Below, one piece after another: positions 7,271-49,730 of a stretch of DNA of 64,000 bases (the first letter of the stretch is position 1; each line of letters begins with the position of its first letter). The stretch lies in the IMG/VR virus record IMGVR_UViG_3300023174_000042, positions 1 through 64,000 of that record; one strand, 5' to 3'. The notes below the pieces were generated by a model. The model did not search any database. It was given only the letters and a program-made list of their open reading frames with translations, and was not told the DNA's origin. Both the position numbers and the translations under genes were made by a program.

Positions 7271-7464
7271 ATTGTATAATTTAAAGATCCCAAATTGATT
7301 TTCGTTTTTTCTTTGGAAATCTAAACGACCACCAAAGAAGTAGTTTTTGAATTGTTCTTTTCATCATTGTCTAAGTTTTCTTTTTATTTTTACAATTGAT
7401 AAAAATAATACTACAAATATATACAATATACCCCACATAAACAAATAATAGTCAATTTAATTAA

Positions 7465-7685
7465 ATAAAAAAGGGGGAGTAGCGAATTCCCCCTTTTGAT
7501 TGTTGCCTTAACAGACAACGGTCCTAAAAGCCCACCACTGAGGATGGGGTCTCTTAAAAAAAGATCCCCACCATTAAGATGGGGATTAATTTTACCTAGG
7601 GGTGGGATTTTCAACCTGTGTCGGATTACGCCAGACACCCTACGATTGGTATTTTTTAATGATTGAACCAATAACAATCAATTCT
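7465..7685 (-). ncRNA. candidate structured non-coding RNA A
   Basis: GC-rich intergenic island with own TATCTTTG (7690-7697), several hairpins and terminator-like ends; 28-nt core related to the 48.7-48.9 kb element. Confidence 0.4.
7469..7497 (-). terminator. intrinsic terminator
   Basis: AAAAGGGGGA/TCCCCCTTTT inverted repeat with flanking A/T tracts. Confidence 0.75.
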
Positions 7686-7705
7686 TATACAAAGATAGTA
7701 ATTTT

Positions 7706-8224
7706 TTACAACTCCACAACTATTTCACCACTTTTACATGAATTTTCTTTTAAATTTTCTTTTTTAGTTCTTGGTCTAACACCAAAATATAAAAAATTAC
7801 CGTCTTCAGAAAATGCTGAACTTATAATTTTTAATTCATTTTCATCTTTTTGTAAAACAAACTCAACAAAATCAAAATATTCTTCATCTTGATTGTCATT
7901 TCTTTCTTTTGTAAAAATAATTCTTTTATTACATGGATTGTGGGTTTTGAAACTTTCTATAATCTTTTGTATTTTATTTTCAATTATAGGAATTAATATT
8001 TTATCTGGAACACCTACTCTGTAATTTTCATCTGAAAGATTTTTTTCAAAAAACAAATCATAATTTTCATCATAAGAATTATCACCGTGTCTATCAAACC
8101 ATTGATGATACGTTGATATTATTTTATACATTATATTATTATAAATTTTATTTCCTTTTTGTTTTGGGAATTTTTTTGTTTCAAACAAATATTGTCTAAT
8201 AACTCTTTCTATTAATGTATCCAT
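7706..8224 (-). CDS. hypothetical late-class protein
   Basis: TATTTATA 4 nt before ATG; leader ends in YLFE. Confidence 0.7.
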   Translation of the reverse strand: MDTLIERVIRQYLFETKKFPKQKGNKIYNNIMYKIISTYHQWFDRHGDNSYDENYDLFFEKNLSDENYRVGVPDKILIPIIENKIQKIIESFKTHNPCNKRIIFTKERNDNQDEEYFDFVEFVLQKDENELKIISSAFSEDGNFLYFGVRPRTKKENLKENSCKSGEIVVEL

Positions 8225-47291: not shown

Positions 47292-48623
47292 TTATTTTTT
47301 ATAAGATAAAACCCTTCTATTTGAATCTTTATTTTTTTTTAAAAAATTTACTTCATCTATTATATTTCCTTCTTGGTCCAAGATTTCACCGCTTTCTCTA
47401 ACATAGTAATTAACAGGAACCTCAACAATTTTTTCAACTTCTTTAATAACCTCAACAGGAACCTCAACAATTTTTTCAACTTCTTTAATAACCTCAACAG
47501 GAATTTCGCGAACAACCTCAACCAATCTATCAACAGGAACCTCACGAACAACCTCAACCAATCTATCAACAGGAACCTCAACAATTTTTTCAACTTCTTT
47601 GATAACTTCAACAGGAACCTCAACAATTTTTTCAACTTCCACAATTCTGTCAATTTCAAATGGAATTTCTATTGGAACTTCAACAATTTTTTCAATTATT
47701 TCAGGCTCAACTTGGGGGGTATCTTGGGAGTCATCTAAGGTTAAAAAACTTTCAGGAACTTCAACTTCGTCTTCTTCAAAGACTTCTTTAATAACAGGTT
47801 TAATTTCTTCATCCTCTTCTTTTCTTCTATATTTTTTAAATGCCTGATTTGTTGATATAACAAGAGCAATTGCCAATGGATCAAAAACAAATATTAAAGT
47901 TAAAATAAAAAAGTTTGCGGTTTTTTTAACATCCCATCCGGTGATTTCACTAAGATATTTAATTGCCCCCAGTTCCCCTGATTCAATCTCTTTAGATGAT
48001 ATATCCAATATTTGAATATCCAAATTGGTAATGCTGTCATTTAGATTATCAATCTTTTTACTTAAAGTGTCTCTTGATTTTTGAGCGATGTTTAATTGTT
48101 GTTGAAATGCTCTTCTATTTCCATCATTTGCCTTTGTTAAAACTTGTCCTGACCTTCTATCAATAGTTTGAGTTGTTGTGCTTGTAGAAAGGGATGTTCT
48201 TAAACTTGTGATGTCTTTATCCAACCCATTTTTTTCTTTTTGGTATTCTTTTTTAATCTCCTCAAATCTTTGTTTCTTTACTTCAATATTTTTAATTTTT
48301 TTATTGTTGATTTCAAGACCAGCAATACTCTTTTGAAACCCTGTTGCCAAAAGTCCATAAATACCGATTGAAGTCAAAATTGATAACGTGACAAGAGCAA
48401 TGGTTAAATATAACTTTAATACACCATATATCTTGTTCCAAGCGTCATGAAGATAAGTGGCAATTGATATTTTAGAAATCTCCAAAAAAGATCCCATAAT
48501 GATTACAGGTATTGAAACTCCTGAAAAAATAATTGAAAGTCCGTATACACTATAATATGCTGCCGTTCCCGATAGTCCAAGTGCACAAAACAATAATAAC
48601 CAAGGTAAAAATTTACTATTCAT
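47292..48623 (-). CDS. multi-TM coiled-coil protein with VEVP/KEVEK repeats
   Basis: Three N-terminal TMs, coiled coil, fourth TM, alveolin-like repeats; TATTTATA at 48640-48647. Confidence 0.75.
   Translation of the reverse strand: MNSKFLPWLLLFCALGLSGTAAYYSVYGLSIIFSGVSIPVIIMGSFLEISKISIATYLHDAWNKIYGVLKLYLTIALVTLSILTSIGIYGLLATGFQKSIAGLEINNKKIKNIEVKKQRFEEIKKEYQKEKNGLDKDITSLRTSLSTSTTTQTIDRRSGQVLTKANDGNRRAFQQQLNIAQKSRDTLSKKIDNLNDSITNLDIQILDISSKEIESGELGAIKYLSEITGWDVKKTANFFILTLIFVFDPLAIALVISTNQAFKKYRRKEEDEEIKPVIKEVFEEDEVEVPESFLTLDDSQDTPQVEPEIIEKIVEVPIEIPFEIDRIVEVEKIVEVPVEVIKEVEKIVEVPVDRLVEVVREVPVDRLVEVVREIPVEVIKEVEKIVEVPVEVIKEVEKIVEVPVNYYVRESGEILDQEGNIIDEVNFLKKNKDSNRRVLSYKK
47410..47700 (-). repeat. 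coding tandem repeats: 42-bp (VEVIKEVEKIVEVP) x3 and 36-bp (VDRLVEVVRE[V/I]P) x2
   Basis: Near-identical DNA units visible directly. Confidence 0.9.
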
Positions 48624-48689
48624 TTAAATTCTTCTTAAATATAAATATCAAAATAACTAAATAGATTGAAAATATAAACTCTATAACAA

Positions 48690-48888
48690 ATAAAACCCCC
48701 CACCGATATCAGTGGGGGAGTGTAGTTTCATCTCACCATATAGATAAGATTGAGGATTTTCACCTTGAGAACCTCGTGTCTCATTCCGCCGAGTTGTTAG
48801 GGTAATCTCGGTTCAACCCTTTTTTTTCGGTCCAATTCTAAAAATTCAAACCCGACAAACTTAATTGATTATATCTATCGTCGTTTAT
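48690..48888 (-). ncRNA. candidate structured non-coding RNA B with two potential H-type pseudoknots
   Basis: Consensus promoter upstream, terminator downstream, no ORF over 18 codons seen; core related to element A. Confidence 0.45.
48692..48718 (-). terminator. intrinsic terminator
   Basis: CCCCCAC...GTGGGGG stem plus U tract on the minus strand. Confidence 0.75.
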
Positions 48889-48892
48889 TATA

Positions 48893-48923
48893 CAAAGATA
48901 AAACAAATATTTAATTTACCAAA
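48893..48923 (-). promoter_or_regulatory. Bacteroidota sigma70-type promoter
   Basis: TTTGG-N18-TATCTTTG. Confidence 0.75.
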
Positions 48924-48929
48924 ACTTTT

Positions 48930-49730
48930 TTATAAATAATCGAATAATTCTGAAGAATCATTTCTAAGTCTTCGAAGGGCCTTTTCTTTGATTTGTCGAA
49001 CACGTTCTTTGGTTAGACCAAAATCAGATCCAATATCTTCTAAAGTTCTTGGAGTTCCAGTAAGTCCAAAATAATCACCAACAATCGACTTTTCACGATC
49101 ATCCAAAACATCCAAAAGTTTTAATAATTTGTCTTTAAGAATGTCTTTTGTATCAAATATCGCGTCCGGAAGTTCGGCATCCTTATTTGCGATCATATCC
49201 AACAAAGTATCACCATCTTCATTTATATTCATATCAAGATCAATCATAGATGGAAGAGAAGCAAACTTATCTTCAAGTTTTTTTCCGGTTTGCTCAACCT
49301 CTTTTTTTGCCTTATGAAGATCCTGAACCACATTAACGGGAAGACGAATTGTTCTTGAGTTATCATTTAACGATTGGATGATAGATTGTTTTACCCACCA
49401 TACCGCATATGATATAAATCTCAAATCTTTGTTCCAATCAAAGTTTTTAATTGCCTTCATTAAACCCAAATTTCCTTCAGCAATCAAGTCAGATAAATCA
49501 AGTCCCTGATTTTGATATTGTTTTGCCACCGTAATTACAAAACGAAGATTTCCTGTTAAAAGTTCTTCTTCAACTTTTTGTTTTTCTTTTAGTTCAATAT
49601 TATCAGACTTCATTTTTACCGCCAGTTCGCGTTCTCTTTCTGCGGTCATTACCTTAATTTTTCGAATATCTTTAAGGTAGTGATAAATTTCATCCTGATT
49701 AATTGGGGATCCTGCGCTTTTTTCTTTCAT
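48930..49730 (-). CDS. rpoD: RpoD-like sigma70 factor lacking region 1.1
   Basis: YLKDI (1.2), NLRFVITVAKQY, DLIAEGNLGL, RFISYAVWW, RTIRLP, region 4 TLEDIG..FGLTKERVRQI. Confidence 0.9.
   Translation of the reverse strand: MKEKSAGSPINQDEIYHYLKDIRKIKVMTAERERELAVKMKSDNIELKEKQKVEEELLTGNLRFVITVAKQYQNQGLDLSDLIAEGNLGLMKAIKNFDWNKDLRFISYAVWWVKQSIIQSLNDNSRTIRLPVNVVQDLHKAKKEVEQTGKKLEDKFASLPSMIDLDMNINEDGDTLLDMIANKDAELPDAIFDTKDILKDKLLKLLDVLDDREKSIVGDYFGLTGTPRTLEDIGSDFGLTKERVRQIKEKALRRLRNDSSELFDYL

What the first reader, a model, noticed from the sequence alone, without database searches (positions are those of the whole stretch)
7465..7697. Candidate ncRNA A: stand-alone promoter-to-terminator unit with no credible ORF
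Seen: TATCTTTG at 7690-7697, then on the minus strand UAGGG..., hairpin GUGUC-UGGCGUAAUCC-GACAC, ...CCCCUA, two similar CCCCAUC-n-UGGUGGG hairpins (the first followed by a U run) and a final terminator. Its 28-nt core GGCGUAAUCCGACACAGGUUGAAAAUCC (7605-7632) matches 25 positions of the core at 48754-48790, allowing 9 inserted nt. Inference: member of a small phage ncRNA family.
Basis: partly seen in the sequence, partly recalled or inferred. Interest (0 to 1): 0.6.

Follow-up and report, generated by a model that had tools for sequence, protein, structure and literature searches.

The report
Structured phage RNA with protein partner
This is a real, roughly 130-base, tightly folded small RNA of a 273-kb freshwater phage that, across many distant relatives, always sits beside one small RelE-like (probably RNA-cutting) protein gene, which points to a previously undescribed RNA-protein pair that resembles RNA-antitoxin systems.

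Summary
On the minus strand, a TATCTTTG motif (7697-7690) is followed by a structured RNA that ends at the first intrinsic terminator (7586-7564 plus a U run), not at the last one. About 130 nt are invariant in phages whose neighbouring protein is only 73-87% identical. The one long ORF across it is not conserved. No Rfam family, tRNA or tmRNA matches.

Proposed fold:
- a 5' H-type pseudoknot with an A-rich loop
- a CG linker
- hairpin P3
- a T-loop-like GGUU...CC hairpin
- a short P4 whose loop covaries with the linker
- a terminator

The new result is linkage. Every homologue of the adjacent 172-aa ORF (p172) examined with DNA in hand, down to 30% identity, has an RNA of this architecture beside it, usually as promoter-RNA-terminator-ORF. 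The pair also moves as a unit between genome positions. p172 models as a RelE/BECR-like fold, with weak scores.

The specific A/B sequence alignment is not significant.

Best reading: a trans-acting RNA partner, probably an inhibitor, of an RNase-like protein. [quoted passage not shown] The function is inferred, not shown.

The parts
7690..7697 (-). Bacteroidota-type -7 promoter motif TATCTTTG of the RNA gene
   Evidence: Invariant in close relatives. A TAnnTTTG motif precedes the RNA in nearly all other lineages. The motif alone is not enriched in the window.
7558..7690 (-). The RNA itself (about 126-133 nt): from about 7690/7686 to the U run of terminator T1
   Evidence: Invariant block in alignment A1. 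In run X2 a metatranscriptome contig covers exactly 7561-7691 with Illumina adapters on both sides, and the contig of X4 stops at 7692. L004/L033 diverge right after T1.
7645..7680 (-). 5' H-type pseudoknot: S1 7680-7675 with 7665-7660, S2 7672-7667 with 7650-7645, A-rich loop 3 at 7659-7651
   Evidence: It is the best pseudoknot in the 5' part (1 of 200 shuffles reach it). The same topology with different stem sequences occurs at the same place in all 13 diverged RNAs, in most followed directly by CG.
7639..7644 (-). Linker CGUAGG. Its last bases pair with the P4 loop, as a closing helix or as a second pseudoknot.
   Evidence: The pair N8:N1 is G-C, C-G or U-A in different lineages. MFE folds draw it as a closing helix.
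7618..7638 (-). Hairpin P3 (GUGUC ... GACAC, plus two inner pairs)
   Evidence: Invariant in types 1-3. In distant relatives the stem changes with compensation: GUAUC/GAUAC in L163, all five pairs flipped in L164, other stems in L165.
7605..7616 (-). T-loop-like hairpin, GG - 8-nt loop UUGAAAAU - CC
   Evidence: The GGUU...CC element is present after P3 in every lineage. In family B the third pair of the equivalent hairpin covaries A-U / G-C. The T-loop reading is my inference from the U-(U/G)-N-R-A pattern.
7594..7603 (-). Short hairpin P4 (ACC - CCUA - GGU)
   Evidence: All three pairs show double changes (ACU/AGU, AGC/GCU, UCC/GGA) and 100% of cells are paired.
7556..7586 (-). Intrinsic terminator T1 (9-bp stem 7586-7564, then C and seven U)
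   Evidence: The terminator scan finds it, with 0.3 expected by chance. The stem changes with compensation in relatives. The adapter-flanked contig ends inside the U run.
7465..7555 (-). Trailing block of two more hairpins and a bidirectional terminator; not part of the core RNA
   Evidence: Conserved with compensatory changes in most type-1 relatives but replaced in L004/L033. The terminator at 7473-7492 is called on the + strand.
7706..8224 (-). p172, the 172-aa ORF linked to the RNA; putative RelE/BECR-like RNase
   Evidence: Adjacent to an RNA of this class in every lineage examined. It is the only family member in the 273-kb genome. AF2 model: pLDDT 87.7. Fold lists are dominated by RelE/ParE/HigB/YoeB/BrnT/CdiA-CT/RegB at Z 3.5-6.1, with PBECR2/ParE rows in the Atlas search. 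No Pfam, PHROG or PADLOC family matches.
48692..48825 (-). RNA 'B': pseudoknot, P3, T-loop-like hairpin, P4, terminator
   Evidence: 47 of 80 related loci carry it. On 26 distinct sequences 97.4% of cells are paired, 10 pairs have double changes, and 0 of 500 shuffles reach this. It lies next to p172 homologues in L078, L080, L103 and L164.
48826..48900 (-). Promoter TATCTTTG (48900-48893) and an apparent remnant of an upstream RNA in front of B
   Evidence: The stretch matches the 5' and 3' ends of the L078/L164-type RNA, with the middle and the p172 gene missing. This comes from comparing by eye; it was not tested statistically.

Best explanation
A is a discrete, non-coding RNA of about 130 nt. 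It is transcribed from its own promoter and ends at terminator T1.

It folds into a compact shape: a 5' H-type pseudoknot with an A-rich loop, hairpin P3, a T-loop-like hairpin, and P4, whose loop pairs back to the linker.

It is the cognate RNA of the neighbouring gene p172, a small protein with a RelE/BECR-like fold that is probably an endoribonuclease. The RNA most likely acts in trans by binding p172 and holding its activity in check. [quoted passage not shown]

In most lineages the order is promoter-RNA-leaky terminator-p172, which would keep the RNA in excess. In the window's lineage the order is inverted and the RNA has its own promoter.

Shown here: the RNA, its structure and its linkage to p172.
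Inferred: the RNase activity, the binding and the inhibition.
For: **Real RNA**
- About 130 nt are invariant while the neighbouring protein is 73-87% identical.
- The ORF is not conserved.
- Ten metatranscriptome runs from at least nine studies hold the stretch.
- One contig equals 7561-7691 with adapters at both ends.

**Structure**
- The pseudoknot recurs with different stem sequences in 13 of 13 lineages.
- P4 and the linker-loop pair covary.
- P3 changes with compensation in distant members.

**Linkage**
- All seven distant p172 homologues (24-37% identical) whose DNA could be read have the RNA directly upstream on the same strand.
- So do the type-3 phages and L078, L109 and L125.
- In type-3 phages the pair sits between homologues of genes that lie at 131-134 kb in this genome, and no other neighbour is shared. 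The pair therefore moved as a unit.

**Acts in trans**
- In the window's lineage the RNA lies downstream of p172, followed by three terminators, and is still invariant.
- L026/L069 keep the RNA although the flanking genes p242 and p172 are missing there.

**p172 as an RNase**
- In the second model about 24 of the top 31 structural neighbours are RelE-superfamily or CdiA-CT RNase toxins or T4 RegB.
- PBECR2, ParE and DUF4258 rows appear in the Atlas search.
- His40, Gln41, Arg45, Glu121, Ser136 and Ser139 are nearly invariant across the family.

**Operon layout** matches the published type III definition (PMC5086642). The precedent for a non-ToxN toxin with a structured RNA that works in cis and in trans is PMC12373285.
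Against: - No biochemical evidence exists for binding, cleavage or toxicity.
- The fold matches are weak: best Z is 6.1, Foldseek gives nothing at E <= 0.001, and the tool warns that Z under 8 can be a common arrangement.
- The RNA is single-copy, not a tandem repeat array.
- The RNA-terminator-ORF layout fits a cis-acting leader equally well.
- B mostly stands without any p172 gene (42 of 47 loci), and this genome has one p172 but two RNAs.
- The 5' end seen in reads (7690/7691) lies a few bases upstream of where a TAnnTTTG promoter should start transcription, and could come from a duplicated fragment.
Confidence: 0.45

Rival explanations
1. Cis-acting leader. The RNA is a riboswitch, or a p172-binding attenuator, that sets how much transcription passes terminator T1 into the downstream gene. 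In the ancestral arrangement that gene is p172.
For: - Promoter-RNA-terminator-ORF, with no room for a second promoter before the start codon, is seen in type 3, L163, L164, L165, L168, L169 and L171.
- In L167 the RNA runs straight into the ORF with no terminator.
- A compact double-pseudoknot fold with conserved unpaired bases is typical of aptamers.
Against: - In the window's lineage the RNA lies after p172. It is followed by three terminators and then a new promoter, yet it is invariant.
- B and the L026/L069 RNAs stand without a p172 gene.
- Loop and junction sequences differ widely between subfamilies, which is unlike a shared ligand pocket.
- I found no conserved alternative pairing between the RNA body and the terminator. 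The terminator stems differ completely between types.
- No Rfam riboswitch matches.
Confidence: 0.25
2. An independent trans-acting RNA (a tRNA-like, ribosome-, RNA polymerase- or host-protein-binding RNA) whose function has nothing to do with p172. In this reading p172 is a selfish or otherwise unrelated gene that tends to sit next to conserved RNA genes, as free-standing homing endonuclease genes do in T4.
For: - RNAs of this class occur without p172: B in 42 of 47 loci, and L026/L069.
- They cluster with other small RNA genes and, in L165, with five tRNA genes.
- The region between the sigma-factor gene and the 443-aa gene is an insertion hot spot.
- The T-loop-like hairpin is a motif used for RNA-RNA docking (my knowledge, not tested here).
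Against: - Linkage holds across the whole p172 family down to 24-30% identity, and each protein subfamily carries its own RNA variant.
- p172 does not model as any known homing-endonuclease fold.
- No antisense targets stand out in the genome.
Confidence: 0.12
3. A processive antitermination RNA of the HK022 put type. The nascent structured RNA would modify the polymerase that made it so that it reads through the terminators that follow.
For: The RNA is promoter-proximal and is always followed by one or more terminators, with same-strand genes beyond.
Against: - No similarity to put or EAR RNAs in Rfam.
- A fresh promoter motif follows the terminators at 7421-7414.
- The adapter-flanked contig ends in T1, so termination there does occur.
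- This reading does not explain the linkage to p172.
Confidence: 0.04
4. A solitary CRISPR-repeat mimic (an RNA anti-CRISPR or mini-array), suggested by a hairpin followed by GGUUGAAAAU, which recalls type I-B/I-C repeat handles.
For: Only the resemblance of the hairpin plus handle, recalled from memory.
Against: - The 21-nt hairpin pattern occurs once per contig. It is never in tandem in 19 viral, 38 metagenome and 3 genome contigs.
- Of the three hits in 185,579 genomes, two are GC-rich chance matches and the third is a small phage-like contig carrying the RNA itself.
Confidence: 0.01

Closest known systems
Type III toxin-antitoxin systems (ToxIN, CptIN, TenpIN)
   Same: - A pseudoknotted non-coding RNA is encoded next to a ~170-aa putative endoribonuclease.
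- In most lineages there is one promoter, the RNA comes first, and a Rho-independent terminator precedes the protein gene.
- RNA and protein variants change together.
- The module is mobile and is found in phages.
   Different: - The RNA is a single ~100-130-nt unit with two pseudoknots, not 2-6 tandem repeats of 34-45 nt.
- The protein does not match ToxN/AbiQ by sequence, and it models as RelE/BECR-like rather than MazF/Kid-like.
- The gene order is inverted in the window.
- Toxicity, processing and inhibition are untested.
AbiF with RCd22 / abiF RNA motif (PMC12373285)
   Same: A structured, non-ToxI-type RNA upstream of a toxic RNA-targeting protein in a phage context. [quoted passage not shown]
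   Different: The protein family differs (Abi_2/HEPN-like there, no Abi_2 match here). The RNA differs too (no abiF motif or any other Rfam hit).
Phage T4 RegB endoribonuclease and RelE/YoeB/HigB toxins
   Same: p172's modelled core (residues about 30-150) aligns with these small alpha/beta RNases. RegB is a phage enzyme of this fold that inactivates early mRNAs (established knowledge).
   Different: - Scores are low (Z 3.6-5.3).
- None of these is known to have a dedicated RNA partner.
- p172 has an extra N-terminal helix and a different set of conserved residues.
Transcriptional riboswitches and protein-binding leader RNAs
   Same: A compact, pseudoknotted RNA is followed by an intrinsic terminator and then a gene. 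Unpaired bases are conserved within each subfamily.
   Different: - Stand-alone copies exist with no gene to control.
- No binding core is shared across subfamilies.
- No antiterminator alternative was found.
- No Rfam match.

Membership tests
Type III toxin-antitoxin system | RNA gene directly upstream of the toxin ORF in one operon, separated by a Rho-independent terminator (PMC5086642) | tested here: inconclusive
   Met in type 3, L163, L164, L165, L168, L169, L171, L078, L109 and L125. Not met in the window's own lineage, where the RNA follows p172 and has its own promoter. L167 has no terminator.
Type III toxin-antitoxin system | Antitoxin is a tandem array of short (34-45 nt) direct repeats | tested here: not met
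   Tandem Repeats Finder finds no array in 7440-7700. There is one copy per locus in all relatives.
Type III toxin-antitoxin system | Antitoxin RNA folds as a pseudoknot | tested here: met
   An H-type pseudoknot is found at the same position in 13 of 13 diverged RNAs with different stem sequences. This is a prediction supported by covariation, not a solved structure.
Type III toxin-antitoxin system | Toxin belongs to ToxN/AbiQ, CptN or TenpN (MazF/Kid/CcdB-like fold) | tested here: not met
   No Pfam or PADLOC match. Structural neighbours are RelE/ParE/CdiA-CT-like.
Type III toxin-antitoxin system | Toxin is an endoRNase that is bound and inhibited by (and processes) the RNA | not testable with these tools
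   Needs expression, co-purification and cleavage assays.
RelE/ParE (BECR) superfamily, for p172 | Sequence match to a family model, or a clear fold match | tested here: inconclusive
   No Pfam hit. VIA-align gives Z 6.1 (5e3e_B) and 5.3 (RelE 2khe), with most top rows from this fold class. Atlas rows include PBECR2 and ParE, with TM by target 0.52-0.63. Foldseek finds nothing at E <= 0.001.
Any Rfam 15 family (riboswitches, ribozymes, sRNAs, abiF motif, put, tmRNA) | Covariance-model score at or near the gathering threshold | tested here: not met
   No hit at gathering level in the window or in 11 relatives' loci apart from tRNAs. The best E-value hits on A and B are far below threshold.
tRNA / tmRNA | Cloverleaf, or tRNA-like domain with a tag | tested here: not met
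   ARAGORN finds none in the window.
CRISPR repeat or solitary-repeat RNA anti-CRISPR | The same sequence recurs as a spaced array in host genomes or in the phage | tested here: not met
   Single occurrences only. Two of the three hits in 185,579 genomes are GC-rich chance matches and the third is the RNA itself on a small phage-like contig.
Transcriptional riboswitch | Binding core conserved across the family, and mutually exclusive terminator/antiterminator pairing | tested here: inconclusive
   Loops and junctions differ between subfamilies. The terminator stems are unrelated between types. I saw no conserved antiterminator, but I made no exhaustive search for one.

The most novel reading that the evidence does not exclude
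This would be a new class of RNA-protein toxin-antitoxin-like modules. A single-copy RNA with two pseudoknots and a T-loop-like hairpin neutralises a RelE/BECR-fold endoribonuclease. The modules are carried and shuffled by freshwater jumbo phages of Bacteroidota, where they may time host or early-mRNA destruction, or act in phage-phage or phage-host conflict. Orphan RNAs such as B would then serve as spare or decoy inhibitors.
Probability: 0.3. Interest if true: 0.8.

Novelty: new variant of a known kind. Interest (0 to 1): 0.72.

Why it matters
If the pairing is functional, RNA-antitoxin (type III-like) logic extends to a second toxin fold (RelE/BECR) and to a non-repetitive, elaborately folded RNA.

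It would also place such modules inside lytic jumbo phages rather than in bacterial defence islands.

It supplies a new, well-covarying structured RNA class of about 100-130 nt with two pseudoknots. That class is suited to structural work and to Rfam.

It gives a testable function to a protein family of about 60 sequence clusters that has no annotation.

Even if the RNA turns out to be a cis-acting leader, it would be a new regulatory RNA class specific to phage genes.

Tried and rejected
- **Rfam.** Searched at gathering and at E-value level on A, B and eleven relatives' loci. Nothing matched but tRNAs in L165.
- **tRNA or tmRNA.** ARAGORN found none.
- **CRISPR-repeat mimic.** The pattern is never tandem.
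- **Protein-coding.** The 88-aa ORF 7411-7677 is open only in the window.
- **Antisense sRNA.** Complementary 12-13-mers in the genome are confined to A/T-rich words, with no informative targets.
- **Direct A/B sequence homology.** The best local alignment is the promoter. Model R1 does not find B. Model R2, with filters off, aligns to A over its full length at only 16.5 bits. It ranks the A-type RNA first in five of eight relatives' loci at 12-17 bits, and much of that score comes from the terminator. I treat this as weak support for shared architecture, not as proof of homology.
- **More copies in the 273-kb genome.** None is convincing.
- **The two ORFs beside the type-2 RNA in L016 as p172 relatives.** hhalign gives no support.
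- **A long-range acceptor-like helix UAGGGUG/CACCCCUA.** Only its inner four or five pairs survive in relatives.
- **Phage GenBank collection.** No nucleotide match to the locus.
- I repeated the analysis by reference.
- **Genetic code.** No alternative code was used.
- **Complex prediction.** Not used, because it does not take RNA.

Full report
**Setting.** The window is the first 64 kb of a 272,576-bp virus record that CheckV rates 93% complete. The genome is A/T-rich. Its promoters carry the Bacteroidota -7 motif TAnnTTTG. One relative of the RNA lies on a contig binned as a Bacteroidia MAG. The host assignment is therefore an inference.

**The observation.**
- TATCTTTG at 7697-7690
- UAGG at 7642-7639
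- the GUGUC/GACAC hairpin at 7638-7618
- CCCCUA at 7602-7597
- a terminator at 7586-7564 with a U run, which the scan also calls
- a second similar hairpin, and a final terminator at 7492-7473

The stretch folds better than all 200 shuffles (z = -3.6). Rfam gives nothing at gathering level for the whole window, and nothing near threshold at E-value level. ARAGORN finds no tRNA or tmRNA.

**It is a conserved non-coding gene.**
- The protein upstream (172 aa, here called p172) picked up 13 related viral loci.
- Twelve of those loci (73-87% identical at the protein level) carry the element at 88-96% nucleotide identity. The thirteenth (L014, 42% identical) carries only its 36-nt core, upstream of the ORF.
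- The first ~130 nt, from the promoter motif to the first terminator, are almost free of substitutions.
- In L004/L033 the sequence after the first terminator is replaced by unrelated DNA with its own promoter. The unit therefore ends at T1.
- The only long ORF across it (88 aa in the window) is broken in every relative.

**Expression.**
- Ten metatranscriptome runs from at least nine studies hold the conserved part.
- Laid on the window, run X2 gives a 169-nt contig that matches 7561-7691 and carries Illumina adapter sequence on both sides. That is a short insert running from the promoter motif's last bases into the U run of T1.
- The contig of X4 stops at 7692. Those of X3 and X5 run from the p172 ORF across the RNA and end near T1.
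- Contigs cannot prove ends, and the adapter-flanked insert could be a duplicated fragment.
- Its 5' end lies four or five bases upstream of where a TAnnTTTG promoter would be expected to start. I take this as good but not conclusive evidence for a discrete RNA of about 126-133 nt.

**Wider family and structure.** An exact-pattern scan for the P3 hairpin found it once each in 19 viral, 38 metagenome and 3 genome contigs. Five of these are GC-rich chance hits, and it is never tandem. Three subtypes emerged. They share this order of elements:
- promoter
- H-type pseudoknot
- CG linker
- P3
- an A
- a GGUU...CC hairpin whose loop fits the T-loop pattern
- a short P4
- an A-rich tail
- terminator

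The evidence for each element:
- **P4.** The stem shows double changes at all three pairs.
- **Linker to P4 loop.** The base before P3 covaries with the first base of the P4 loop (G-C, C-G, U-A). MFE folds draw this as a closing helix. That helix and P4 cannot both form fully when the loop has four bases. The RNA may therefore have two conformers, or the contact may be a two-base-pair pseudoknot. This is unresolved.
- **5' pseudoknot.** A constrained search of the 5' parts of 13 diverged RNAs found the same topology at the same place in all of them. Stem 2 ends directly at the linker, which begins with CG in nine of the thirteen; loop 3 is A-rich; and the stem sequences are unrelated between lineages. 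Between 0 and 18 of 200 shuffles reached each score.

B (48692-48825, minus strand) is real.
- 47 of 80 loci around the neighbouring ORF carry it. That ORF is a sigma-70 family factor.
- On 26 distinct sequences the structure I propose has 97.4% of cells paired and ten pairs with double changes. No shuffle out of 500 reaches this.
- The structure is pseudoknot, P3, a three-pair hairpin with a seven-base loop UGAAAAU, P4 and a terminator.
- All variation in its 5' domain falls in the three pseudoknot loops.

The specific A/B sequence alignment does not hold. The best local alignment is the promoter. A's model does not find B. The proposed match also pairs non-equivalent positions. B's model aligns to A over its full length at only 16.5 bits, and picks out A-type RNAs in relatives at 9-17 bits, partly on the strength of the terminator. 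A and B are best described as two subfamilies of one architectural class.

**Linkage to p172.**
- p172 homologues flank the RNA in both main subtypes but in opposite order. In type 1 the RNA follows p172. In type 3 the order is promoter-RNA-terminator-p172.
- In type-3 phages the pair sits between homologues of genes that are neighbours at 131-134 kb in this genome. Nothing else around the pair is shared, so it moved as a unit.
- A profile search of 1.84 billion representatives found 62 p172 clusters.
- I looked up eight distant members, 24-37% identical to p172. All seven with DNA available have an RNA of this architecture directly upstream on the same strand. The eighth has a 203-nt gap there, after a sigma-factor gene.
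- P3 changes with compensation in these RNAs: GUAUC/GAUAC in L163, all five pairs flipped in L164, other stems in L165.
- In L164, L078 and L080 an A-like RNA precedes the p172 homologue and a B RNA follows it. In L103 the order is sigma gene, B, a further promoter with an A-like RNA, and then the p172 homologue. L165 has paralogous RNAs on both sides.
- The window's genome has a single p172 gene.
- The stretch between B's promoter and B looks like the two ends of an L078-type RNA with the middle and the p172 gene deleted. This comparison was by eye only.
- L026/L069 keep the RNA although p242 and p172 are missing from that spot.

**What p172 may be.**
- It has no Pfam, PHROG or PADLOC family and no sequence relative in the PDB.
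- With 38 diverse sequences, AlphaFold gives pLDDT 87.7 and pTM 0.80.
- Foldseek finds nothing significant.
- The exhaustive aligner's list is headed by the CdiA-CT/CdiI entry 5e3e chain B (Z 6.1) and RelE (Z 5.3). About 24 of the top 31 rows are RelE, ParE, HigB, YoeB, YafQ, BrnT, CdiA-CT toxins or T4 RegB (and likewise).
- The Atlas shape search lists PBECR2, ParE and DUF4258 clusters.
- Each score is below the tool's caution line. The signal is the consistency of one fold class.
- His40, Gln41, Arg45, Gly47, Glu121, Ser136 and Ser139 are nearly invariant across the family. A His/Arg/Glu set would suit a small RNase, but that is my inference.

**Mechanism.**
- The layout in most lineages (one promoter, RNA, Rho-independent terminator, then a ~170-aa putative RNase) is the published signature of type III toxin-antitoxin operons. 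It differs in lacking the RNA repeats and in the toxin fold.
- The AbiF/RCd22 pair shows that a structured RNA upstream of a different toxin can act in cis and in trans by direct binding.
- The window's RNA lies downstream of p172, is followed by three terminators and a new promoter motif, and is still invariant. A purely cis-acting role cannot explain this lineage.
- I therefore favour a trans-acting RNA partner that binds and restrains p172.
- The cis-leader or riboswitch reading remains a serious rival for the ancestral arrangement.
- An unrelated RNA with a hitch-hiking gene, put-like antitermination and a CRISPR-repeat mimic are less likely or excluded, for the reasons given under the rivals.

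**Limits.** Nothing here shows binding, cleavage or toxicity.

Noticed in passing
window 48826-48900 (minus): Between B's promoter and B lies about 70 nt that resembles the 5' and 3' ends of the L078/L164-type RNA, with the middle and the p172 gene missing. It looks like a decayed second RNA-p172 module.
   Followed up: partly
L078:3330-3480; also L077, L079, L080, L095, L112, L113, L117; L016:13162-13291: A third conserved small element, about 150 nt with its own TATCTTTG promoter, sits in the same hot spot. In L016 it directly follows the type-2 RNA with no terminator between them. It is absent from this genome.
   Followed up: partly
window 7465-7555 (minus): After T1 come two more hairpins and a bidirectional terminator. 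They keep their pairing through compensatory changes in most relatives but are replaced in L004/L033. Their purpose beyond termination is unknown.
   Followed up: partly
window 47292-49730 (minus): The 266-aa ORF is a sigma-70 family factor. The gap between it and the 443-aa ORF is an insertion hot spot in relatives, holding small RNAs, RNA-p172 modules, and in L109/L125 an ORF that looks by eye like a cytosine-5 DNA methyltransferase.
   Followed up: partly
L165:2400-2901: Five tRNA genes lie immediately after an RNA-p172-RNA module. This may be a hint that the RNAs are tied to tRNA biology, or it may be only clustering of RNA genes.
   Followed up: no
window 7281-7367 (minus): A 28-aa basic and hydrophobic ORF just downstream of the RNA is conserved in L018, L026 and L039.
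   Followed up: no
window 7594-7644 (minus): Both the P4 stem and the linker-to-P4-loop pairing covary, yet they seem sterically exclusive when the loop has four bases. They may be alternative conformers.
   Followed up: partly
L026:7440-7567 and L069:4572-4699: In these phages the RNA follows the p75 homologue directly, without p242, without p172 and without the TATCTTTG motif, yet its sequence is almost unchanged. The 46.6-kb contig that holds L026 (rated 16% complete) has no p172 homologue. The 240-kb contig that holds L069 could not be searched.
   Followed up: partly
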